Origin: Octopus sinensis
Taxonomy: Eukaryota
Direction of reading: 5' to 3'
Length of the DNA: 64,000 bases
NCBI RefSeq assembly: GCF_006345805.1
Contig: NC_043015.1
Coordinates: 45,012,001 to 45,076,000, forward strand
Part shown: positions 16,905 to 52,151 of the stretch, in pieces
How the letters are laid out: each line of letters starts with the position of its first letter
Numbering within the stretch: the first letter of the stretch is position 1
The notes under the pieces: generated by a model
The model's input: only the letters and a program-made list of their open reading frames with translations
What the model was told of the DNA's origin: nothing
The model's database searches: none
Made by a program: the position numbers and the translations under genes

Positions 16905-17425
16905 AAGGGTATGGCCTGGTCAGCCTGTAATGACGTGCATAAGATCTGGTCATCAAATCTAAGTAGAGACTTCAAACTTGAAATCTTCAAAGCCACAGTC
17001 GAACCAATTCTACTATATGGCTCAGAAACCTGGACATTATCAAAGAAGCTTGAGAGGTGGTTGGATGGAACCTACACTCGCCTCCTTATGAGAGCTCAAA
17101 ATCTCTCGTGGAAGCGTCATCCAACCAAAATGCTAATAAATGGGAAACTACCACCTGTGTCATCTCTTGTGAAAGGTAGGAGAGTCCAGTTTGCTGGACA
17201 TTGTTGTAGAGCTGAAAAAGAGGTAATTTCTACTCTTCTCCTCTGGAAGCCATCAACTCGCAATACCAGAGGGCACACACTCTCCTATCCTGATGTAATC
17301 TCCAGGGATGCAGGCATCCAGCAACAGGACCTCCGTAATGCTTTGATGGACCGTGAAGTCTGGCGTAGCATGGTAAATTCCATTGTCTCGACTACGGTTG
17401 AACAATGATGAGTGATGATGATGAT
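16905..17425 (+). mobile_element. RTE-clade LINE 3' fragment
   Basis: 165-aa ORF 16911..17408 (LLYGSETWTL...RRVQFAGHC) followed by a (GAT)n tail. Confidence 0.9.
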
Positions 17426-25706: not shown

Positions 25707-25886
25707 ACATCATCATCATCATCATTTGGCATCCGCTTTCCATGCTAGCATGGGTTGGACGGTTCAACTGGGGTCTGTGAAGCTGGAAGGCTTCGTCAGG
25801 CCCAGTCAGATCTGGCAGTGTTTCTACGGCTGGATGCCCTTCCTAACGCCAACCACTCCGTGAGTGTAGTGGGTGCTTTTTACGTG
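25707..25886 (-). mobile_element. RTE-LINE 3' end (family B) within a microsatellite
   Basis: (CAT)n-TTTGGCATCCGCTTTCCATGCTAGC. Confidence 0.8.
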
Positions 25887-26175
25887 CTTTTTACATACAT
25901 ACATACATACATATATATATATACCCATACATATACATACATACATACACATACATACATACATACATATATATATATACACATACATACATATATACAC
26001 ACATACATACATACATATACACATACATACACACATACATACATACATATACATACATACATACACACATACATACATACATATATATATATACACATAC
26101 ATATACATACATACATATACATACACACATACATACATACACACATACATATATACATACACAAACATACAGACA
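25887..26175. repeat. (TACA)n/(TA)n compound microsatellite
   Basis: Direct reading. Confidence 0.95.
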
Positions 26176-26499
26176 GACAGAGAAATAGCAGTGTAAAGTA
26201 TCCTGTCAGTTATCTTTCAATTATCATTTCTTCTTTTTTTTTTTTCTTCTTTACCATTCGATTTACCATTATTGGTAGTTTACACAAAATCCGATCGATT
26301 TCCTATTGATTCCTCTTGGAATTGTCTCAGTACTTTCTAAATTTATGCCAGGCAGAATGTTGTGCAGTAGAGAAAAAATATATATATATATATATTTAAT
26401 TGTTTCTATATATTCATCTCCTGCACGACAAGCCCCCCCCCCCGCCTCCCCCACTACTGTCTCACGTCTCTGATCATTCTTTTGAATTCGGAACTCGTG

Positions 26500-26522
26500 T
26501 ATATGTGTGTATAAAATATGTA

Positions 26523-26563
<41 letters not shown>

Positions 26564-26738
26564 ATATATATAATATGTATGTATGTATGTATATATATAT
26601 ATATATTATGTATGTATGTATGTATGTATATATATATATATATAATATATATGTATGTATGTATATATGTATGTATATATGTATGCGTATGTATGTATAT
26701 ATATATATATATATATATAATGTATGTATGTATGTATG

Positions 26739-26784
<46 letters not shown>

Positions 26785-26923
26785 GTATATATGTATGTAT
26801 ATATATATATATATATATATATAATGTATGTATGTATATATATGTATGTATGTATGTATATATATGTATGTATGTATGTATGTATATATGTATATTATGT
26901 ATGTATGTATATAAATATATATG

Positions 26924-26967
<44 letters not shown>

Positions 26968-27413
26968 GTATGTATGTATATATGTATGTATATATATATG
27001 TATGTATGTATATATGTATGTATATATAATATATGTATGTATGTAATATGTATGTATATATATATATACGTATGTATGCATATATGTATGTATGTATATA
27101 TGTATATATATATATATACGTATGTATGCATATATATATGTATGTATATATATATGTATGTATGTATATATATATGTATGTATGTATGTATATATATATA
27201 TATGTATGTATATATATATGTGTGTGTGTATATATATATATATTATATATATATATATATGTATGTATATATATGTGTGTATATATATATATATGTATAT
27301 ATTTCTTTACTACCCACAAAGGGCTAAACAGAGGGGACAAACAAGGACAATATATATATGTATGTATATATGTATATATATATGTATATATATATATATG
27401 TATATATACATGT

Positions 27414-27444
<31 letters not shown>

Positions 27445-27470
27445 CTCACATATGCACACATATATACATC
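26500..27470. repeat. ~1-kb compound (TG)n/(TATG)n/(TA)n microsatellite
   Basis: Direct reading; contains a ~50-bp SINE C fragment at 27300-27350. Confidence 0.95.
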
Positions 27471-28848
27471 AACACATTTGTGTTTTGTATGTACATATGA
27501 AATACTTTATTCATATAATTTATCTGATGGTGTGTGTGTGTCTGTGTGTGTACGTGTGTCAATCGATAACGAAGTGAGGTTGTATCAGTGCAGTACAGTA
27601 CACAGACCGCTTTCTTCCGTCCAAACATAATACTATCTCTCGCTGGACAGATTACTTGACTTGACAGAAAGATTCGAAGGAATGGATAGAGAGAGAGAGA
27701 GAGAGAGAAAAAAAAAAAAGAAGAAAAAGACACAGCTGTAACGAGAGAGTGTGTGAGAGAGTTGGCATCAGGTGCGACAACACAGAAGATATATAGACAG
27801 TGGTCTTTTGAATAATTAATCATGCTTCTAATAAAGACAACCTCTTAAACTCTTGTCTCTGCTTCTGCACCATCTTCCATTAGAAATTATTCCGTCTTTT
27901 ACTGGATAATTATAAACTTGAAGCCATAGATATTTTGCTGTGTATTTTGTGTTTTTGAGTTGGGGTTTTTATTCCGATATTTTTTTGCGGGGTTTGTTGC
28001 TTTCTTTTGAAAACTTCAGTAAAGAAGTTTCTTAATATTTTTTAGCAGGAACTTTTTTTTTTTTTTCAAAAGTGTCGATTACACCCCTCCCCCCACCTCC
28101 TTTTAGACAATAGAAATTGAAATAAATATACCAAGTTTAAAAGCCGTATTTATTTTATAGAGATAAAAAAAAATATTTTATCTTTTTTTTTTTTTTCTTC
28201 GTGTCGGATTTATTATTATTTCTTGTCGTATCTCGTATTTTGTGGACAATTAAGTTTTGAAGATCAGGTTTTATCATTGTTTTTTATATTTTATGGAAAA
28301 TTGATTTAATTTCTTTTTTTTTTTCGAATGAAAATGGGGAGAATCAATAAAAAATAGTAATAAAATCACGATAAAACGATTATTAAAAAAAAAAAGAAGC
28401 AATTTTTCCCGCCTCTGTACTTGTTAACCTTTTCTTCTGAATCTGAATCGAATTCTGGTGCGTTAAGTCGCTAGATGTAACTACAGTAGGTCGCGATCCT
28501 ATTCGAGGTCTTTAAGAATTTATCTGGGGTTCGTCAAACCGCCCATATTTTAATAACGGTGGCAGCAGAACCTTCGTCTTAGACATAGTCGTTATTACGA
28601 TCAATATTTTGTAATTTTCGTTCAATAATTTGTCTCAAAGAAGGACTTGTATATATGCAAGTAATGTCATATTAACTTCTGAAGAACTGCAAAAGGTTCA
28701 CCAGAAATACTTAAGCGGGAACATTTTTGATTGAAGATAAATTTTTTTTTGTTAGGATGATGAATATTTCAATCACATTGATAATCAATATTATTAGTAG
28801 CTGGCTTTTGAATGTCTTGACTAAATTCTTACTATAAAATGAAGTTTA

Positions 28849-30942: not shown

Positions 30943-32476
30943 ATGGATGACAATACAAAAGTAATGTTGAAGCTGGCTACTTTCTTAGCTCAGCAGAACA
31001 ACTCTCGTGTCAACAATACAGGAAACCAAAACCCTCTTACAGAACTGGCTACCCAACTATTGATGAATAGCACTAGTGAAACCCTTGCCATACCAACGTC
31101 TCTGCAATCACACCCAGCAAAACAACTGCCATCTCATCAACCAGACAACAGCACCTCTAGCATGTTTCAAACACAAGCTTCACCAGTGCCTATCTCTCAG
31201 AACACTTCATCAAATCACATGAATAATACTTACAGTGTAAATGCTTCATCACTTCAAGGGAACATCGCAAATACAAAGAGTTCAGTTCCTAGGGCTAATG
31301 AGATGATGTCGCTGAACAATACTTCAAACAAAGACATGATTCCAGTAGCATCCCCAATCAACAGAGATTCTTTTAACGTAATGTCCCCTGTTATGGATCA
31401 AGAAAACTTCTCTCCTATCAACAGAGACAATTTCCCCATCAGCAGGGATACATTTAACGTGACAACTGCCAACTCTTATCCTATCAACTCACCTATGAAT
31501 CACGACACATTCACCACAGCTTCTTCTGTCAACCGAGATTCCTTTACAATGTCATCCGCAGTCAACAGGGAGTCCTATCCTGCAACATCATCTGGAAATT
31601 CACTCTCATCATCCCCAGCGACTAACCGGGAAATGTTAACTGTAATGCCGCCAGTAAATAGAGACACGTTTTCTGCTGCTTCTCCTGTCAACCGAGAAAC
31701 GTATCCCAATAATCCTGCTATGAATAGGGATACATTTAACGTCAACCGAGACAACATGAGTGGGAATTGTCCTGAGACAAGAGATTCATTTTCTTCAGAT
31801 TGCTCTGCTACTAGGGTCTCCTTTAACATAACATCACCAAGAAATCGAGAAAATTACACAAGTACTCCAGTTATTGGTCGAGACTCGTATTCGGTAACCT
31901 CCCCAGTTAATAGCGACTCTTACGGATCTGGGATGCCAACGAGCCATGAGTCTTACCAAGTCAGTTCTCCTTCTAACCGAATTTCTGAAGATTCTGCTAT
32001 GAACTCTTTGAATATGATGCGAGGGGATATCTCCAGAAATACAGCTTTAACAAGAGTTCCTGATGAGATGAATATGAACCAAGTGGAGGACATGGTTGTC
32101 ACTAGTGGCGGTGGTGGTGGAAGTAGTAACGGTAGTAGTATTAACAGCGGTTTGGGCTCAATCAACAGTTCAATGTCATGCAACCTGTCTTCCATGAACT
32201 CTTCTTCCAATGAAGTGCATATAAACTCTTCAAATAATTGTGCCTATTACAAGCGACCGATACAAGGAGAAAAGGGACGATCGTATCCCCAGCCAGTCAT
32301 ACTTCGATCACGACCTCGTCCTGTTAAAGAGAGGTCTAAAAGAGGTCCCAAAGAGAAGGATTATTTCAGAACTGCTTTCTTTTGTCTACCAAATGTGACA
32401 GCCCGACTCCCACGCTTTACGTCCTCTGATCCTCGTGAGCAAGACCTTGTCCTCGATTATCAAAAACAAGGTTATG
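30943..32476 (+). CDS. HECT-like pseudo-ligase gene, coding exon 1 (aa 1-511; S/N/T-rich region with 11-aa repeats, basic patch, start of central domain)
   Basis: Acceptor TTTCCAG at 30897; in-frame TGA at 30913 upstream of ATG 30943; 1.5-kb open frame; donor TAT G|GTAAGA (phase 1). Confidence 0.85.
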
Positions 32477-32568
32477 GTAAGAAATGTTTCTTTTATGTTC
32501 TTTTAATTAATGCCCCCTCCCCTCTCAAAAAATTTCTTGTCTTGCAAGTTACTTGGTTACCCTTCCAG

Positions 32569-32975
32569 TGCTGGTGCCACATAAAAATCATCCAGTCCAG
32601 AGTGTGAAGTGGTTGGCATTTGGAAGGGCATCTGGATGTAAAAAGACCATGCCAAAACTGACCTCACCTATGCTGGTGCCACATAAAAAGCATCCAGTCC
32701 AGAGTGTGAAGTGGTTGGCATTTGGAAGGGCATCTGGATGTAAAAATACCATACTAAAACTGACCTCACCTATGCTGGTGCCACATAAAAAGCACTCAGT
32801 CCACTCTATGGGGTGGTTGGTGTTAGGAAGAGCATCCAGCAGTAAAAGCCATGCCAAAACAGACACGGTAGCTAGGGTAGTTTTTCTAGCTTGGTGTAGT
32901 CTCCCACCTGGCCGGCTCCTGTCAAACCGTCCAACCCATGCCAGCATGGAAGGCAGACGTTAAACAATGATGATG
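32569..32975 (+). repeat. Intronic 102-bp tandem repeat derived from a family B element
   Basis: TGCTGGTGCCACATAAAAA starts at 32569, 32671 and 32773; ends in a family B (GAT)n tail. Confidence 0.85.
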
Positions 32976-33243
32976 AAAATAATACTCTTCCTGTTTTGTA
33001 TCATCATCATCATCATCATCATCATTTAACGTCTGTTTTCCATGCTGGCATGGGTCAGATGGTTTAAGGTGGTTGGCATTAAGAAGTGCATCCAGCCAGC
33101 CATATCAAAACAGTGAAGCCTGGTGCAATCTTCTGGCTTGCCAGCTCCTGTCAAACCATCCAACCCATGGAAAATGAATGTTGTTGTTGTTGATGATGAT
33201 GGTGATGATGATCGCTTGACCTAAATTAATTTTTCTTTTACAG

Positions 33244-33476
33244 GTTTCCCAGCAAAAGACTACTTTGAAGGCAAACCTCAGAAGACTTATATTCGTCTCA
33301 GTCATGATGAAGAAAGTTTCCGTTGCTTTCTGTTAAGTATTTATCCGAAACTTGAGGGAAAGTATTATGAACTTTATAGAATTGATCGGCAGAGAAATTT
33401 GGTTCGCATTGAAGCTAAGACCCCCCGCGGTATCAAGAATGCTAAATACCAAGGAACGATCATCATTTTGCCCTAC
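33244..33476 (+). CDS. HECT-like gene, coding exon 2
   Basis: TTTTACAG|GT TTC CCA...; reads GFPAKDYFEGKPQKTYIRLSHDEESFRCFLLSIYPKLEGKYYELYRIDRQRNLVRIEAKTPRGIKNAKYQGTIIILPY; donor GTAAGT; phase 1 to 0. Confidence 0.85.
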
Positions 33477-33527
33477 GTAAGTTTGCAAGGTCGCACTATT
33501 TGTATTTGTACTTCATTTAACAGCTTT

Positions 33528-33712
33528 AGGACCTTTTCGGTTTGAACGGCAGTTTTTACAAATAATTTCCACGTAACTAAACACTTTTAAACTTCGTATA
33601 CTGGTAGAATGTGTTTATAAAACATCTTTTTCTCTTGGCTTTATTGAGAAAATTCTATAGTTTGTAAGATATTTGTTGTTTTTTACTTCAATTTCTGCAA
33701 TTTCAACCATCC
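33528..33712. mobile_element. Single end of the 7872-type MITE
   Basis: AGGACCTTTTCGGTTTGAACGGCAG...AAACTTCGTATACTGGTAGAATGTG. Confidence 0.7.
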
Positions 33713-33895
33713 CTTCTCATTCAGAACTCCCACTACAAGATATAATGATTAGGTAATGAAATGACTTCAACAGGGCCAATGTTTCATCTGTAAAAAAACA
33801 CAATGCGAAACATCCACTTATCAGTTGGCAATTAGTAGAAATTTACAATAGTCTAAAGTGGCTGAAGACTTTTGCATGGTACCGGAGTGGTTGGT

Positions 33896-34058
33896 GCTAC
33901 ACTCACGGACTGGTTGGCGTTAGGAAGGGCATCAAGCTGTATAAACACTGCCAGATCAGACTGGAGCCTGGTGCAGCCTCATGGCTTCCCAGACCCCGGT
34001 CGAACCGTCCAACCCGTGCTAGCACAGAAAACAGACATTAAACGATGATGATGATGAT
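33896..34058 (+). mobile_element. RTE-LINE 3' end (family B)
   Basis: Ends AACAGACATTAAACGATGATGATG. Confidence 0.8.
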
Positions 34059-34388
34059 ATATAGAATTAAGAGTCAGAACCTCCATAAAGTAATTCAATT
34101 AATAATGAAAGATGCTATCTATAATAAAATATAAATTTAAATATATTATTATTAACATTATACTAAAAATTTACCTGAACTTTTCTGAAAACTTAAGAAG
34201 TTAGACATGATGGTTGTCAAGTTAAAGTGCTGGATTATTGATTAAATTTTCATAGTTTCAAATTAGACTCTGCCATCGTTTTCTCTCCTTTGGCTGGCCA
34301 TATAATTTTTCATATCTCAGTCTGCCTGGCTGACAACAAGCTTAATTCATACTTCATGATTAACAGATTACTGCAATAAAAAGTGTGG

Positions 34389-34772
34389 AGTGGCTGTGTG
34401 GTAAGTAGCATGCTTACCAACCACATGGTTCCGGGTTCAGTCCCACTGCGTGGCACCTTGGGCAAGTGTCTTCTACTATAGCCTCGGGCTGACCAAAGCC
34501 TTGTGAGTGGATTTGGTAGACAGAAACTGAAAGAAGTCCGTCGTATATATGTATACATATATATATGTGTGTATATTTGTGTGTCTGTGTTTGTCCCCCC
34601 AACATCGCTTGACAACTGATGCTGGTGTGTTTACGTCCCTGTAACTTAGCGGTTCGGCAAAAGAGACCGATAGAATAAGTACTAGGCTTACAACGAATAA
34701 GTCCTGGGATCAATTTACTCGACTAAAGGCAGTGCTCCAGCATGGCCACAGTCACATGACTGAAACAAGTAA
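34389..34772 (+). mobile_element. SINE family A
   Basis: Full head-to-tail match. Confidence 0.85.
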
Positions 34773-35210
34773 AAGAGTAAATGTTGAGACTCCTTCATCA
34801 TTATCATCATCATCATTTATTATCCGTTTTCCCGTGCTTGCATGGGTCAGATGGAATTTGTTGAGGCAGGTTTTGTACAGTCAAATAACCTTCCTGTCAC
34901 CAATCCTCATCTATTTCTAAGCAAGGTAATATTTCCCCCGCAGTTAGACGTGTGTTTCCGGTACCAGTTGCGTACTGGAGTCGATCTAACTGACTAGCCC
35001 CCTACCCAAAAATTTCGGGCCTTGTGCCTAGAGTAGAAAAGATTCATTTCAGTCATTTGACTGCAGCCATGCTGGAACATTGTCTTCAAAATTTACAAAA
35101 CCCTCCAAAAATGTGAAGCAATTTAATAAACTAAATTATGAATTAAACTTTCTTACTTTTTAATTTAATTTCTTCTTTTGTATTTTTTCAAAAACTTTTT
35201 TTTTATTTAG

Positions 35211-35426
35211 CCTGAAGCTTCAAATCCACCATCAGCTGTTGTGCACAACCCAAGTAGTATTGGAGACTTTCCTGTCCAGCTATGCAATGATTCCATTGAA
35301 AATATTAATGAAAACAATGAATGTGAAGAAGAAAACATGATACCATCACCAAGTGTCTGTGGTTCCACGCCCCAGCAATCTCCTTTCATGCCACCAAACC
35401 ATGAAGTAGCTACATATGATCATAAG
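35211..35426 (+). CDS. HECT-like gene, coding exon 3 (acidic/Pro-rich linker)
   Basis: Long T tract-TTTAG|CCT GAA GCT...CAT AAG|GTAACT; 216 nt, phase 0 to 0; PEASNPP...VATYDHK. Confidence 0.75.
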
Positions 35427-35671
35427 GTAACTATCTTTAATATAAATTATGATTGATTGAATTGGCAGAATTGATTAAGTGTCAGACAAATGTTAGTAAT
35501 ATCCATTTACACTGTAAGTTGAAATCTCGTAATGTTTGTCTTGCATTTCAACCTTGCAGAGATTTTATCCTGTTAGGGAATATGTTGAATAAAATCATAA
35601 TTAACTGATCCTCCTGTATTTTCTTTTGCCCAAGGCCAGGAACTTTACAGCACCCCTTGTATGTATGTATA

Positions 35672-35975
35672 TGTCACGTGATCGACCAGGCTATCAGATG
35701 TTGCTACGCATCGCTGGTCACAATGTGCTTCGCATTGTTTTAGCCTTCAAATGATGCCACCCCACTGGCTAAGGGAGCAGGCCAACAGAAGACAGAGTGA
35801 GAGAAAGTTGTGGTGAAAGAGTACAGCAGGGATCGCCACCACCCCCTGCTGGAGCCTCGTGGAGTTTTAGGCGATTTCGCTCAATAAACACTCACAACGC
35901 CTGGTCTAGGAATCGAAACCGCGATCCTACGACCGCGAGTCTGCTGCCCAAACCACTGGGCCATTGCGCCTCCAC
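35672..35975 (-). mobile_element. tRNA-headed SINE family D
   Basis: Reverse complement of the 19023/29857 head. Confidence 0.75.
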
Positions 35976-36030
35976 ACACATATATATATATGTGTGTTCC
36001 CAAATACATGCACACACGTGTGTGAGTGTA

Positions 36031-36245
36031 TGAGGGGTGCTGAAAAGTTAGTGGCTTTAAGGTATCATGAAAGTCCTGGCTGGAGGTCCAACCTTCCAAG
36101 TTCTTTTACTGAGCTACAAAAAACTGAAGGACCCCTGCAATAAGTTTATGAATCTGAAAGGGGAATTTGTTGAATTAAATCATAATTAACTGATCCATCT
36201 GTATTTTCTTTTACTCAAAGCCAGGAACTTTTTAGCATCCCCTCA
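36031..36245. mobile_element. Mariner-type MITE
   Basis: TA|TGAGGGGTGCTGAAAAGTT...AACTTTTTAGCATCCCCTCA inverted ends; partial copy at ~35570-35660. Confidence 0.7.
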
Positions 36246-37258
36246 TGTGTGTGTGTCTCCTCCCTCACATGATAATAATTAATAAATGAATGTTGCTGTC
36301 ATTCATTTCCAATATTCTTTGAAAACATGTCAGGCCATGGGGAAATATTACCTTGCTTGGAAACTAGTGAGGGATGGCAACAAGAAGATGCATTCGTCTC
36401 TAGAAAATCTGCCTCTATAAACTCTGTCCAACGCATGCAAGCATGGAAAAGAGAACATGAAAATGACGGTGATGATGATGATGATGAATAAAATAGGGGA
36501 CAGGTTTGTTATTGGGTGGGTTCAACTGGTTATTCATGCCTATAAATTTATGGCCTTAAGTCAGTTTCAGAATTATTAGTATTCATCATCATCATCATCA
36601 TCACGATCATCCAGTGTCTATCTTCCATGCTGGCATGGGTTGGATGGGTTGACAGGAGCTGGCAAGCTTGAGAACTGCACCAGGATCCATTGTTTGTTTC
36701 GGCATGGTTTTTGTGGCTGGATGCCCTTCCGAACACCAACCACTTTACAGAGTTGACTGGGTACTTTCCGTGTAGCGCCAGCACTTGCAAGGTCACCAAG
36801 TAACTTGCAAGATCTTTTGAGAGTGAGGGGATGATATTGGAGGCAGTGGCTTTGTGCCAGGTGGTGAGAGGTTATAGTATAACAGAGGGGCAGAAACAGG
36901 TGTTTGCTGTAGAGGGGATACATGGTTACCCTAGTCAGACGAAGAGAGTGAGAGAGAGCAGGAGGAGTGAGCAAGATTGAGAGAGATGGTGGCGCTGTGA
37001 ATATAAATGGGATTATTATTACATAAGGGACAAGAATATAAATGGGATTATTATTGCTGGGAGTACAAGAGTAGAAAGTTCAGGTTGAATGCAAAACAGG
37101 GGGCGGGGTAGTGACTGGTGAAACCTGGCTGTATAGAGTCGGGACAACAAGATAGCAATGATACAGATGGCAGGGCAGGGAGGACAGGGTTGACCTGCAG
37201 GATTAGGGAGGAAGAGATGAATAAAGTATTAATTTATTCCATGTTTTCTACTTCAAAG

Positions 37259-37325
37259 GAATCCTACGAGTTATCACCTCCATCTCCAGAACGTGATATC
37301 AAACCATTTCAAAGATTTGATTCTG
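37259..37325 (+). CDS. HECT-like gene, coding exon 4
   Basis: TTTTCTACTTCAAAG|GAA TCC...TCT G|GTACGT; ESYELSPPSPERDIKPFQRFDS; phase 0 to 1, which is required to join exon 3 to exon 5 in frame. Confidence 0.7.
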
Positions 37326-38463
37326 GTACGTATCCATTATTCATCCTGATACTTTTTTTACCTCATTTTTGAAGACAATGAATTTCAGAATATCATATTA
37401 TCTTTTTGAGAATTAGTCCTAAGTAGCATCTTTTAAATTGTCTTATTTTTTTTTTCATATCTTTCGTACTTTAAATACTGCTTGAATTTTCTCCATATTT
37501 AACAATCATGAAATATATGTAGTTAGGTGCAGGTGTAGCCGTGTGGTTTAAGACCCTTGCTTCCCTACTGTATAGTTTTAGGTTCAGTCCCACTGCGCAG
37601 CACCTTGGATGCTTATTTTCGATCTTCTATGAAAACATGTCCAGTCATAGGAAAATATTACCTTGCTTAGAAACAAGCGAGGTTTGTCAATCTGACCATT
37701 GAAAAATCTACCCCAACAAGTTCTGGATCATGCAAGCAAGGAAAAATTAACATTAAAACAATGATGATGATATTTCACTTCTAAATTAGAGGTTAATAAT
37801 CTGAAAGTTTATAATCATACATGCATTGTTGTTTTAATTTTTTTTTAAATTAATTTTTTTACTTGTTTCAGTCATTGAACTGGTGGCCATGCTGGAGCAC
37901 CACCTTCAAAGGTTTAGTCAAACAAATTGATTCCAGTACCTATTTTTGAAGTCTACTACTTACCCTATCAGTCTCTTTTGACAAACTAAGCTACCTGGAC
38001 ATAAACAAACCTACACCAGTTGTCAAGTGGTTGTGGGAAAAGACACACAGTGGGTGTCATACATATATGTATATGACACACATCATCATCATTGTTAATG
38101 TTCATATTCCATACTGGGATGGGTTGGATGGTTTAACAGGAGTTCACAAGCTGCTGGAGAGCTGCACCAAGCTCCAATTGTCTGTTTTGGTGCCACATAA
38201 AAAGCCCCATGTTGATGCCACATCAAAAGCACCCGTGCTGGTGCCATGTGTAAAGAACTGGTGCTAGTTCGTCATAAAAAGCACCCAGTACACACTGTAA
38301 AGTGGTTGGCATTAGGAAAGGCATCCAGCTGTAGAAACCATGCCAAGACACACTCATATACTCATATATATATATATATATATATATATACACTTAAGGT
38401 GGTTTTAGAGTCAGATCCTGGCTGCTATTTTCAGCATGGCGGTATCTCGTAGATACCCTAAGT

Positions 38464-38509
<46 letters not shown>

Positions 38510-38826
38510 GTGGGCTTCAACATAGTTTCTGCCAGCCAAATTCACTCATGAGGCTTTCACAGACACAAGGTTATAGGAGAAGACACTTGCTCAATGTACC
38601 AGGCAGTGGGACTGAACCTGAAACCACCCAGTTGGAAAGCAAGCTTTTTAACCACACAGCATACCATTAAATTTTTTTTTTTACATCTTAGTTGTTACTG
38701 TCAGGCTTTTGTTTTATACTCTTGCACTAGTTCCATTTATTTTCTATTCTCTGATTGATTTAATATTTAGATGTTCCAGTTGTATCTAATTTCGAATTTT
38801 AATTTCTCTTATTTTCTTTTGCACAG

Positions 38827-39890
38827 AAAATTCTGAATTATTTCAAAGAATTTCCCTCATAAAGCAAACTCTTTCCGAAACGAGAAACTTGAAGATGGAT
38901 AAAAGGTCTATCGTTGGAAATCTGTTGGAGTTGTATCGTGCTGAGCATACCATCTGTAACTATGACATCCGGGTCACATTTAACAATGACCCCAATCTCA
39001 CTTTATCGAACGATCCATCATTTCAAACACGTCACATGTTTTGTATATTCTGGAAGAAAATTTTCAACAATAATTTCGTCGGAAATGAAGAATACTATCC
39101 AGTCATAAGTCCCGAGGCTGAAGACGATATGTTTGAAATTCTCGGCCGCATTCTCGCTCATGGATTAATATTATGTAACTATTGGCCTATCCAGTTTGCT
39201 GTGGCATCAGCCACCTACATGCTCTGTCAAGGCTGCTCTGATGAGCTCATTTTGAAATCATTCACCAATTGCCTCAGTGGATTTGAGCAGAGGATTGTCA
39301 TGTCAGCCCTAAAGGAATCTCGTTCCCAAATTGGAGAACCAACTTTCTCTTCCACTCTAGAAACCAATTTATCAGCATTTCTATGGACTAACGGTTGTCA
39401 ATTAGACCGACCTGGTCAGCTTCCTGGTATTTTGTTAAGCATAGCCAGAAGTTACCTTATATACCAACCATACTGGGCACTTGTGAAGCTGAAAAAAGGA
39501 ATGGAACACTGCAGCAATAAAGTATTCAAAGATTGTTCTGAAAGCGATGTTGAAAATTTATACAAAACATTAACACCTGAAGCATCTCAAATTTGCAAAT
39601 TAATCAAGTATGAGTTTAGTCAAGAAGAATCTCACCAGGAAATTGAGAAAACATTACAGACTTACTTAGAAAAATTACTTTGGGAAATGTCATTAGTTGA
39701 ACTTGCAAACTTGTTACAATTGTGGACTGGTGTGAACTGCTTGTCACAACAAACTTTGTTTGTGAAATTTGTGAACACTTCAGATCAGTTGCTGTTTCAG
39801 AATCATAAATCTCTGCTCCGAATCCCTCGCAAAATACAGACATTTAAAGAATTTACAGAATCCATTCAATTACTTCTGGATGGAACATGA
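38827..39890 (+). CDS. HECT-like gene, coding exon 5: HECT-like domain without the catalytic Cys
   Basis: TTTTGCACAG|AA AAT...; HECT-like landmarks IRVTF, FWKKIF..FVG.EEYYP, ILGRILAHG, IA...LIYQP, LYKTLTP, LLQLWTG, LLRIP...F; stop TGA 39888-39890. Spliced CDS 3114 nt = 1037 aa. Confidence 0.85.
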
Positions 39891-51263: not shown

Positions 51264-52151
51264 TTAACGGCGTTTAGTTCCACCAAATCCAGAGGCTGTT
51301 CGAGTTTCGGAGCTGCTGAAGCTACTTGAGGGGCCAGAATGATAACCTGTTGGTGACCCAAACCAGTCTCTTTGATACCCATCATTGTAATAAGAGTTCG
51401 AGCGGTAACCACCTCTGTTTCCAAAAAGGTAGCCGAGAAATGCACCAGAAGCTAGACCACTGAAAAATCCAGGCTGTTGTCCGGTATTACTGTGAGATGT
51501 GGAGCTGTACGGAGGTGGAGCATCCTGGCCTGAGCAGTAATCGGATCTGAAACCGTATGGCGGTGGAGGGGCACTTGGAGTTGACCCGCTTTGTGCGCCT
51601 CCGGGAAACGATGATGGATTGGTAGGTGTTGCAAAACAAGTACGATACACGAAGAAGATAATCATAATAACAAACAGGAAAGTGAAAATTGAGCCGAACC
51701 CAAAACCCGATTCGTGTTTCGACGAGTAATGGTTGAAGTAACTGCCTGAGCCTTTCTGGTTTACGTAGTCAATGTCGTATTCCAGACCGCAAGAGCCAGC
51801 CAGGATGTAAGGGTCGTCAGCATACTCGTAACCTTCGCACGAGACAACGATCTGTCCGAAGCGATACCTTTTGTCCATGTCCGTTTTACATTCCCACTGG
51901 ATATCGTAGCCGTCCCAACCTCTGTTGTAACACTGGACGGTCTGTGGAATGACGGACCGACATCCTGCTGATCCGCCAGTGCATTTCAACTGAGCGACTG
52001 GGGAAGACCTCCTCGCGGTCGTCATCTGTCCACGATTTAGAGTGATCACGTTGATGTCCTGCAACAGGACTTTCCTTCCTTCGATTTCTTGGCCATAAAT
52101 CAAAACCAGTAAAATAAGTGTAAGTGCGGGAAGTCTCTTGATTTCTGTCAT
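51264..52151 (-). CDS. SARAF: Store-operated calcium entry-associated regulatory factor (SARAF/TMEM66), single coding exon, 295 aa
   Basis: Signal peptide; luminal domain with LTL..G.MTT.RRSSPV.QLKC, VQCYNRGWDGYDIQWECK, SCEGYEY..DPYIL.GSCGLEY and 6 Cys (57, 64, 74, 88, 105, 121); one TM helix (~153-169); PPPY motifs; C-terminal SGFGGTKRR. Confidence 0.95.
   Translation of the reverse strand: MTEIKRLPALTLILLVLIYGQEIEGRKVLLQDINVITLNRGQMTTARRSSPVAQLKCTGGSAGCRSVIPQTVQCYNRGWDGYDIQWECKTDMDKRYRFGQIVVSCEGYEYADDPYILAGSCGLEYDIDYVNQKGSGSYFNHYSSKHESGFGFGSIFTFLFVIMIIFFVYRTCFATPTNPSSFPGGAQSGSTPSAPPPPYGFRSDYCSGQDAPPPYSSTSHSNTGQQPGFFSGLASGAFLGYLFGNRGGYRSNSYYNDGYQRDWFGSPTGYHSGPSSSFSSSETRTASGFGGTKRR

What the first reader, a model, noticed from the sequence alone, without database searches (positions are those of the whole stretch)
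30943..39890. Uncharacterised 1037-aa protein: 11-aa repeat array + small central domain + catalytically dead HECT
Seen: five exons join in frame (phases 1, 0, 0, 1) with no stops, so the gene appears intact despite TE-filled introns. The ORF track shows it only as disconnected pieces. Known: HECT E3 ligases need a C-lobe cysteine. Inference: the central-domain-plus-HECT layout resembles the WW-less, G2E3-like HECT proteins of invertebrates and fish. Here it seems remodelled into a non-catalytic scaffold with a long disordered phospho-repeat arm and a basic, NLS-like patch (RSRPRPVKERSKRGPKEK). I do not recognise this architecture as a described protein. This is the best candidate for a new system in the window.
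Basis: partly seen in the sequence, partly recalled or inferred. Interest (0 to 1): 0.8.

Follow-up and report, generated by a model that had tools for sequence, protein, structure and literature searches.

The report
Cysteine-less HECT protein with ubiquitin-like domain
This is a real, intact five-exon octopus gene, conserved across molluscs but never studied, whose protein joins a disordered repeat arm and a ubiquitin-like domain to a HECT ubiquitin-ligase fold that lacks the normal catalytic cysteine, so it probably binds rather than transfers ubiquitin.

Summary
Five GT-AG exons (30943-32476, 33244-33476, 35211-35426, 37259-37325, 38827-39890; phases 1,0,0,1) give a 1037-aa ORF. It is 98% identical to O. 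bimaculoides LOC106878106, and an intron-less transcript contig from a related cephalopod supports it.

The C-terminal 353 aa get no direct Pfam HECT hit. They are still a HECT domain:
- relatives found by profile search pass PF00632;
- a family profile hits solved HECT domains (E 1e-13);
- an AlphaFold model (pLDDT 95.9) matches UBR5, NEDD4 and HUWE1 HECT domains.

The catalytic-Cys column holds His1010 (Tyr in O. bimaculoides). Every molluscan orthologue lacks the Cys, so the loss is ancient, not an octopus remodelling. The "small central domain" (aa 474-589) models as a ubiquitin-like beta-grasp fold. The NRD[ST][FY] 11-aa repeat is real and seen only in coleoid cephalopods.

The G2E3 likeness is unsupported: there are no PHD/RING fingers. 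The nearest Cys-bearing relatives are HECT-only ORFs, and the two whose neighbourhoods I examined lie beside integrase genes.

Most likely it is a non-catalytic HECT pseudoenzyme that acts as an adaptor. One loose end is a Cys (Cys988) that is near-invariant in this clade and almost perfectly anticorrelated with the canonical Cys. This is a new variant of a known kind, of moderate interest.

The parts
30943..32476 (+). Exon 1 (aa 1-511, plus the first base of codon 512); donor GTAAGA
   Evidence: Decapodiform genomic ORFs P0006 and P0007 read through the same donor (...GYG|K).
30943..31077 (+). Conserved N-terminal segment, aa 1-45 (MDDNTKVMLKLATFLAQQN...ELATQLLMN): two short helix-like motifs
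   Evidence: 87-100% identical among cephalopods and recognisable in unionid and dreissenid bivalves. No Pfam family.
31342..31977 (+). About 11-aa repeat array, xxSPVNRD[ST][FY]x, roughly 16 units (aa 134-345), in a low-complexity S/N/T/P-rich arm
   Evidence: Present in octopods and decapodiforms; absent from the P0004/P0005 type and from bivalves. No DNA-level tandem repeat.
32305..32358 (+). Basic patch RSRPRPVKERSKRGPKEK (aa 455-472); the KRGPKEK core is invariant in molluscs
   Evidence: Low pLDDT (54-68) in the AF2 model, so probably flexible.
32362..33476 (+). Ubiquitin-like (beta-grasp) domain, aa 474-589. It is encoded by the end of exon 1 (32362-32476) plus all of exon 2 (33244-33476); intron 1 lies between them.
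   Evidence: AF2 mean pLDDT 87.4. All top Foldseek PDB matches are beta-grasp domains: p47 UBX, PB1, TBCE UBL, RAWUL, USP4/11/15 UBL. 99% identical between octopus and decapodiform. No Pfam family.
33244..33476 (+). Exon 2 (aa 512-589), phase 1 in and phase 0 out
   Evidence: The same exon boundaries appear as read-through ORFs in other molluscs (P0023, P0041-43, P0052, P0090-92).
35211..35426 (+). Exon 3 (aa 590-661), acidic/Pro-rich linker
37259..37325 (+). Exon 4 (67 nt; aa 662-683 plus one base), linker with the conserved PPSPERDIKPFQ
   Evidence: The peptide is present in P0001-P0003.
38827..39890 (+). Exon 5: complete HECT-fold domain (aa 685-1037) and the stop codon
39804..39806 (+). 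His1010 codon: the position of the canonical HECT catalytic cysteine
   Evidence: Column holds Cys in 43 of 54 relatives and His here. Pro1017 lies at +7, as in C-F-N-x-L-x-L-P. The residue is Tyr in O. bimaculoides.
39738..39740 (+). Cys988 codon: a Cys near-invariant in this clade (W-x-G-x-[DN]-C-L), anticorrelated with the canonical Cys

Best explanation
SHOWN. The locus is an intact, spliced, conserved protein-coding gene. It is the octopus orthologue of O. bimaculoides LOC106878106 and belongs to an uncharacterised family found across molluscs. The protein has five parts:
1. A short conserved N-terminal helical segment.
2. A long disordered arm that, in coleoid cephalopods, carries about 16 copies of an 11-residue NRD[ST][FY] unit.
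3. An invariant basic KRGPKEK patch.
4. A ubiquitin-like beta-grasp domain.
5. After an acidic linker, a complete bilobal HECT fold. Its catalytic-cysteine position holds a variable non-Cys residue (His1010 here), and its -4 position is Leu rather than Phe.

INFERRED. Canonical HECT catalysis needs a thioester on that cysteine, so the domain cannot work as a canonical HECT ligase. The fold, and above all the UBL, are nevertheless under strong purifying selection. The most likely role is therefore a pseudoenzyme adaptor in the ubiquitin system. The dead HECT would keep non-covalent contacts of the fold (E2, ubiquitin or a partner). The UBL would serve as an in-cis or in-trans ligand of that fold or of ubiquitin receptors. 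The repeat arm would add multivalent short-motif binding, possibly regulated by phosphorylation. The basic patch would direct nuclear localisation. This is analogous to the way Cys-less UEV proteins relate to E2 enzymes.
For: - Gene model and junctions.
- Orthologues: O. bimaculoides 98%, Argonauta 84-89%, a decapodiform transcript 60-75%, a second cephalopod-type transcript 40%. Bivalves (Potamilus, Sinanodonta, Dreissena, Mytilus, Saccostrea, Pecten, Tegillarca) and Haliotis.
- HECT homology: the exhaustive profile search found 952 hits. Intermediates P0069, P0100, P0124 and P0118 pass the PF00632 gathering score (43.7, 40.4, 29.8 and 31.5 bits against 23.9). Profile A4 hits TOM1 at 9.7e-14 and covers the HUWE1 HECT domain end to end. 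AF2 pLDDT 95.9, pTM 0.92. Foldseek probability 1.00 and E about 1e-11 to UBR5, Rsp5, NEDD4 and HUWE1 HECT domains.
- Missing Cys. All 49 sequences in the set that lack the catalytic Cys are listed there, and the residue varies among them (H, Y, D, S, R, N, E, F, K, G).
- C-terminal -4 residue is Leu1034, whereas Cys-bearing relatives often end F-D-x-x.
- UBL.
- Conservation by region: UBL 99%, pre-UBL 88%, HECT 71%, repeats 35% (octopus against decapodiform).
Against: - Nothing here tests binding to ubiquitin or an E2, localisation, or phosphorylation.
- Pfam HECT does not hit the protein directly, and a shallow family profile did not hit PDB HECT domains. The HECT assignment therefore rests on transitive homology and a predicted model.
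- The UBL assignment rests on weak Foldseek scores (best E 5e-3, TM 0.35-0.5).
- The clade-wide Cys988 leaves open a non-canonical catalytic route.
- The basic patch fits no strict classical NLS pattern. That is from my own reading of the sequence, not a tool result.
Confidence: 0.55

Rival explanations
1. It is still an active ligase that uses a relocated nucleophile. The clade that lost the canonical cysteine carries a near-invariant Cys (Cys988 here, motif W-x-G-x-[D/N]-C-L). That Cys sits in the loop just before the C-lobe beta-hairpin whose turn normally carries the catalytic Cys.
For: Over 202 aligned HECT domains the counts are: canonical Cys without Cys988, 150; no canonical Cys with Cys988, 48; both, 3; neither, 1. 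In the AF2 secondary structure Cys988 (exon-5 residue 304) lies in loop 301-309, before strand 310-315. Position 1010 (residue 326) lies in the turn after strand 322-324 of the same hairpin. Closeness in space is my inference from that topology, not a measurement.
Against: The 48 sequences form essentially one clade, so the anticorrelation may reflect a single event. About 60 other positions are equally invariant among the cephalopod sequences. The -4 Phe is lost and C-terminal tails vary widely between orthologues.
Confidence: 0.1
2. The HECT fold has been co-opted for a role unrelated to ubiquitin, for example a nuclear, chromatin or RNA-protein scaffold, with the beta-grasp domain acting as a PB1- or RBD-like interaction module.
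For: Beta-grasp matches include PB1, RAWUL and Ras-binding domains as well as UBL and UBX domains. The catalytic residues are degenerate. The basic patch and the conserved N-terminal helices have no ubiquitin-related signature.
Against: The whole bilobal fold, including both N-lobe subdomains, is kept at very high model confidence. Cys-bearing relatives with the same central-domain-plus-HECT layout exist (P0050; the Hydractinia protein P0063 has the same layout, but its model ends before the catalytic-Cys position). This suggests descent from a working ligase.
Confidence: 0.2
3. It is a molluscan G2E3 orthologue or G2E3-like ligase.
For: The nearest Cys-bearing relatives are small, WW-less HECT proteins with an RRPxAHTC motif. 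From memory, not tested here, such proteins are often auto-named 'G2E3-like'.
Against: There are no PHD or RING-like fingers, which PMC7394505 gives as the unusual feature of G2E3. None of the relatives I looked up carries that name. Marin 2010 dates G2E3 after the chordate/echinoderm split. No G2E3 sequence was available for a direct comparison.
Confidence: 0.05
4. It is an artefact: a pseudogene, or chance ORF pieces between transposons.
For: The introns are full of repeats. Pfam finds nothing in the protein.
Against: The spliced ORF is 3114 nt long. It has the same exon structure as the NCBI models. A related species has an intron-less transcript. The UBL is 99% conserved across coleoids, and orthologues occur across Mollusca.
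Confidence: 0.02

Closest known systems
Canonical HECT E3 ligases (E6AP/UBE3A, NEDD4 family, HUWE1, UBR5, TOM1; Pfam PF00632)
   Same: Same bilobal fold over the full 350 residues. The domain sits at the C-terminus, and the core N-lobe motifs (FW, LGxxLxHG, YxP) are shared.
   Different: No catalytic Cys (His1010). The -4 Phe is replaced by Leu. The loop between the TG motif and the next strand is shorter. The protein falls below the Pfam threshold.
HECT-only, Cys-bearing relatives of about 350 aa (P0112, P0190 and others), and P0118 with a retrotransposon Gag domain
   Same: They are the closest sequence relatives of the C-terminal domain outside the Cys-less molluscan clade (about 19-25% identity in alignment A4; profile E 1e-17 to 1e-36).
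   Different: They keep RRPxAHTC and usually lack the UBL and the N-terminal arm. Two of them lie next to an HTH plus integrase-core ORF pair, so they look transposon-associated.
G2E3
   Same: A HECT protein without WW or RLD domains.
   Different: G2E3 has N-terminal PHD/RING-like fingers and a catalytic Cys (PMC7394505). This protein has neither. No direct sequence comparison was possible.
UEV proteins (UEV1A/MMS2, TSG101), the Cys-less relatives of E2 enzymes (comparison from general knowledge)
   Same: A ubiquitin-system enzyme fold kept under selection after loss of the thioester cysteine. It is the best precedent for a binding-only role.
   Different: Different fold and different step of the cascade. 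The analogy is conceptual only and was not tested.
Beta-grasp modules in ubiquitin-system proteins (p47 UBX, USP4/11/15 UBL, RING1B RAWUL, PB1; the Parkin Ubl as a regulatory precedent, from general knowledge)
   Same: The predicted fold of aa 526-589, with an added N-terminal strand and helix.
   Different: No sequence-family membership. No C-terminal Gly-Gly. The preceding KRGPKEK...FFCLP...LPxF[ST]S element is specific to this family.

Membership tests
HECT domain (PF00632) E3 ligases | Significant match to the curated HECT profile | tested here: not met
   No PF00632 hit at E<=10 for exon 5 or for aa 512-1037. Molluscan orthologues P0008, P0010, P0013 and P0015 also have no hit.
HECT domain (PF00632) E3 ligases | Homology to HECT domains by transitive or profile search | tested here: met
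   The family profile finds proteins that pass the PF00632 gathering score. Profile A4, which includes the window sequence, hits solved HECT domains at E 1e-13 to 1e-9, with full-length cover of HUWE1 and NEDD4.
HECT domain (PF00632) E3 ligases | Bilobal HECT fold (N-lobe plus C-lobe) | tested here: met
   AF2 pLDDT 95.9. Foldseek against PDB: 95 matches at E<=1e-3, and all 50 listed matches are HECT domains, probability 1.00. This is a predicted model, not an experimental structure.
HECT domain (PF00632) E3 ligases | Catalytic cysteine in the C-lobe (the ...HTC-FNxLxLP motif) | tested here: not met
   His1010 occupies the column, which holds Cys in 43 of 54 relatives, and Pro1017 lies at +7. 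The same result came from an hmmsearch alignment of 242 domain hits (202 of them scorable at both columns).
HECT domain (PF00632) E3 ligases | Phe at position -4 from the C-terminus, needed for ligation (from general knowledge) | tested here: not met
   The C-terminus is ...L1034-D-G-T. Cys-bearing relatives commonly end F-D-x-x.
HECT domain (PF00632) E3 ligases | Thioester formation with ubiquitin and E3 activity | not testable with these tools
   This needs a biochemical assay.
G2E3 | N-terminal PHD/RING-like zinc fingers | tested here: not met
   No PHD or RING hit in exon 1 or elsewhere. The feature is taken from PMC7394505.
G2E3 | HECT domain groups with vertebrate G2E3 in a phylogeny | not tested
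No G2E3 entry appeared among the 60 listed PDB matches (69 in all).
Ubiquitin-like (beta-grasp) superfold | Beta-grasp topology | tested here: met
   AF2 pLDDT 87.4, with order strand-helix-strand-strand-helix-strand. All 50 top Foldseek matches are beta-grasp domains, but the scores are weak: best E 5.4e-3, probability up to 0.99, TM 0.35-0.63.
Ubiquitin-like (beta-grasp) superfold | Sequence membership in a named UBL, UBX or PB1 family | tested here: not met
   No Pfam family for any of the 18 aligned members. The best PDB profile hits are non-significant (E 0.049 and 0.65).

The most novel reading that the evidence does not exclude
The molluscan UBL-HECT clade may not be dead. It may have moved its nucleophile to the clade-wide Cys988, in the loop next to the old catalytic hairpin. 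That would be a HECT ligase with a relocated active-site cysteine, possibly regulated in cis by its own ubiquitin-like domain.
Probability: 0.1. Interest if true: 0.75.

Novelty: new variant of a known kind. Interest (0 to 1): 0.4.

Why it matters
Pseudoenzymes are well known for E2s (UEV proteins) and for deubiquitinases. My literature searches, however, found no described, conserved, cysteine-less HECT family.

This family is invisible to the usual PF00632 screen. The published Mytilus HECT survey used that model (PMC11353290), and the Mytilus orthologue P0010 gets no Pfam hit. HECT inventories of molluscs therefore under-count it.

A UBL fused to a dead HECT fold gives a defined system for asking what the HECT scaffold does apart from catalysis. 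The coleoid-specific 11-residue repeat arm is a clear lineage-specific addition.

It does not open a long-standing question, and the function is still inferred.

Tried and rejected
1. Direct Pfam scans of the exon pieces and of aa 512-1037 gave only a sub-threshold SNU71_RBD match (20 bits against a cut-off of 27), which I took as chance.

2. A shallow family profile (5 sequences) against PDB gave no HECT hit. The wider profile A4 was needed.

3. The first homologue search, with the full protein, was swamped by the low-complexity arm: 3 hits from a capped list of 8000 candidates. I repeated it with the conserved part.

4. I first thought the Cys in decapodiform and P0004-type orthologues (..YKCLL....HQCLL..) might be a retained catalytic Cys. 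Column mapping puts it at +2 (Ser1012 here), not at the catalytic position. I rejected it as the canonical Cys.

5. TRF on exon 1 found no 33-nt repeat, so the array is not recent.

6. I looked for a paralogue in the window by tblastn with P0004, P0008 and P0014. There is none outside the five exons.

7. I searched for names of the HECT-only relatives to test 'G2E3-like' and found none.

8. Literature searches for the accessions and LOC ids found 0 papers.

9. Brooks et al. 2008 on G2E3 is not held in the library.

10. I considered dN/dS between the window and L001 but did not run it. At 60-75% protein identity dS would be saturated, so I used identity by region instead.

Full report
**1. The observation**

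Exon 1 runs from the ATG at 30943 to 32476 (donor GTAAGA). Exon 2 is 33244-33476, exon 3 is 35211-35426 and exon 5 is 38827-39890.

A scan for phase-0-in, phase-1-out exons of 67 nt between exons 3 and 5 gave two candidates. Only 37259-37325 has a good acceptor (ttttctacttcaaag|) and donor (|gtacgt). Joining the five pieces gives 3114 nt, in frame, with one terminal TGA, and 1037 aa, exactly as reported. The intron phases are 1,0,0,1 and all splice sites are GT-AG.

The introns are 45-87% covered by sequence repeated elsewhere in the window, while each exon matches only itself.

**2. Is the model real?**

The protein is 98% identical over its full length to O. bimaculoides LOC106878106 (1033 aa) and 84% identical to Argonauta hians LOC115221967. 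A 986-aa orthologue (60% overall, 75% over the conserved 607 aa) sits as one uninterrupted ORF on a 3134-nt Logan contig. That contig is therefore an assembled transcript.

The protein alignment crosses all four junctions without gaps, and the exon-4 peptide is present. At the DNA level the transcript aligns collinearly, with breaks at 32477/33243 and at 33476.

Genomic read-through ORFs from other molluscs stop at the same exon-1 and exon-2 boundaries. The gene is intact and already predicted in public annotation, but it carries only the names 'uncharacterized protein' or 'HECT domain-containing protein'.

**3. The N-terminal arm**

The first 45 residues are conserved: 87-100% among cephalopods, and recognisable in unionid and dreissenid bivalves.

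Residues 134-345 hold the repeat. The strict motif R[DEV][STN][FYL] occurs 12 times, against 0.11 expected by shuffling (maximum 4 in 2000). A looser motif gives 16 units with a dominant spacing of 11. TRF sees no 33-nt DNA repeat, so the units are old.

The repeat is shared by octopods and decapodiform sequences. It is replaced by a Gln-rich stretch in the P0004/P0005 type and is absent from bivalves. It is therefore a coleoid addition to an older protein. Its composition (S, N, T, P, R, D) fits disorder. A phospho-regulated role is conjecture.

**4. The C-terminal domain**

Pfam gives no HECT hit, even at E<=10, and a five-sequence profile did not reach any solved HECT domain. The exhaustive profile search changed this. 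It returned 952 proteins at E<=1e-3. Among them, P0069, P0100, P0124 and P0118 pass the PF00632 gathering score, and most of the roughly 350-aa relatives carry precomputed PF00632.

A profile of exon 5 plus 53 such relatives hits TOM1 (9.7e-14), AREL1, E6AP, Rsp5 and NEDD4, and covers the HUWE1 HECT domain end to end. AlphaFold2 on that alignment gives mean pLDDT 95.9 and pTM 0.92. Foldseek places the model on UBR5, Rsp5, NEDD4, HUWE1, SMURF and E6AP HECT domains, with probability 1.00 and E about 1e-11.

The domain is a divergent but complete HECT fold.

**5. The catalytic cysteine**

In alignment A4 the column of the RRPxAHT-C motif holds Cys in 43 of 54 sequences, and the window has His1010 there. 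Pro1017 lies at +7, as in C-F-N-x-L-x-L-P. An independent hmmsearch alignment of 242 domain hits (202 scorable at both columns) gives the same assignment.

O. bimaculoides has Tyr at this position. Other molluscs have D, S, R, N, E, F, K or G, so the position is unconstrained. The Cys that I first noticed in decapodiform and P0004-type sequences lies at +2 (Ser1012 here), not at the catalytic position. The -4 residue is Leu1034 rather than Phe.

The loss is shared by cephalopods, seven bivalve genera and Haliotis. It is ancient, not an octopus remodelling. P0050, which has the same central-domain-plus-HECT layout, keeps the Cys (FPTAFTCTN). The cnidarian Hydractinia has a related layout, though its model ends before the Cys position. 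This suggests descent from an active ligase.

**6. The central domain**

A model of aa 453-594, built from 18 sequences, has mean pLDDT 87.4. It contains:
- a strand at 474-481 (YFRTAFFC);
- a helix at 497-508;
- a strand-helix-strand-strand-helix-strand unit at 526-589.

All top Foldseek matches are beta-grasp domains: p47 UBX, PB1, TBCE UBL, RING1B RAWUL, USP4/11/15 UBL and Ras-binding domains. The scores are weak (best E 5.4e-3, probability up to 0.99). No Pfam family or significant PDB sequence match exists.

It is the most conserved part of the protein, 99% identical between octopus and decapodiform. The basic patch (aa 455-472) is low-confidence and probably flexible. Its KRGPKEK core is invariant in molluscs. 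A Mytilus protein (P0076) carries two such modules in tandem.

**7. Mechanism**

Shown: the architecture, the fold, the absent canonical nucleophile and strong purifying selection.

Inferred: the protein is a HECT pseudoenzyme that keeps non-covalent functions of the fold, with a UBL as ligand and a multivalent disordered arm. The relation resembles that of UEV proteins to E2 enzymes.

An unexplained feature keeps a more interesting reading alive. Cys988, in W-x-G-x-[D/N]-C-L, is present in 48 of the 49 aligned domains that lack the canonical Cys. The full counts are in the table below.

| Canonical Cys | Cys988 | Domains |
|---|---|---|
| present | absent | 150 |
| absent | present | 48 |
| present | present | 3 |
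| absent | absent | 1 |

In the model's secondary structure Cys988 lies in the loop before the hairpin whose turn holds position 1010. Because the 48 sequences are essentially one clade, this may be a single historical event. I could not measure distances.

**8. Comparison with what is known**

It is not G2E3. It has no PHD/RING fingers, none of the relatives I looked up carries a G2E3 name, and Marin 2010 dates G2E3 late.

Its nearest Cys-bearing relatives are HECT-only ORFs. In two independent assemblies these lie next to an HTH plus integrase-core (rva_4, E 8e-77) ORF pair. One anemone relative carries a retrotransposon Gag domain.

The published mussel HECT survey used PF00632, which misses this family. 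Literature searches found no description of the gene or of a conserved Cys-less HECT family.

**9. Verdict**

Three points need correction. The Cys loss is ancient, the central domain is ubiquitin-like, and the G2E3 link is unsupported.

This is a new variant of a known kind, of moderate interest (0.4).

Noticed in passing
window 51264-52151 (-): An intact single-ORF gene of 295 aa for a SARAF protein (store-operated calcium entry regulator; PF06682, E 8e-82). It lies about 11 kb downstream on the opposite strand.
   Followed up: partly
window 16911-17408 (+): A 165-aa ORF that looks like the C-terminal end of a LINE-type reverse transcriptase. Pfam gives only a weak DUF6451 hit.
   Followed up: partly
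window about 25750-27580, both strands: A long AT-rich microsatellite-like block (GC 0.26) that produces several spurious ORFs of 150-280 aa, rich in Y, I, C and H.
   Followed up: no
L004 6001-9715 and L005 543-12885: Cys-bearing HECT-only relatives (P0190, P0112) each sit beside a convergent HTH ORF plus an integrase-core ORF (rva_4, E 8e-77), in two different ENA assemblies. L005 also holds a second HECT ORF and a DDE_1+PHD ORF. The active relatives of this domain look transposon-associated.
   Followed up: partly
window 39738-39740 (Cys988) against 39804-39806 (His1010): Near-perfect anticorrelation across 202 HECT domains between the canonical catalytic Cys and a Cys at the 988 position (150 / 48 / 3 / 1). 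It is either a signature of one clade or a relocated nucleophile.
   Followed up: partly
L003 (ENA ERZ21867824 ctg121759l, 336187 bp): The contig carrying exon 1 of the decapodiform orthologue (P0006) has the same length as the contig that carries P0182, the last exon of the Gln-rich P0004-type gene. Cephalopods probably have two linked paralogues. None is in this window, and none is within 10 kb of P0006.
   Followed up: partly
P0076 (Mytilus coruscus CAC5409682.1): A 417-aa protein with two tandem copies of the basic-patch plus beta-grasp module and no HECT domain. The module can therefore exist on its own.
   Followed up: no
window 32511-32960 (intron 1): Three tandem copies of a roughly 90-nt unit. 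Translated, it reads ...LVPHKKHPVQSVKWLAFGRASGCK.... Related copies occur in the other introns and elsewhere in the window, so it is probably a SINE-like element.
   Followed up: no
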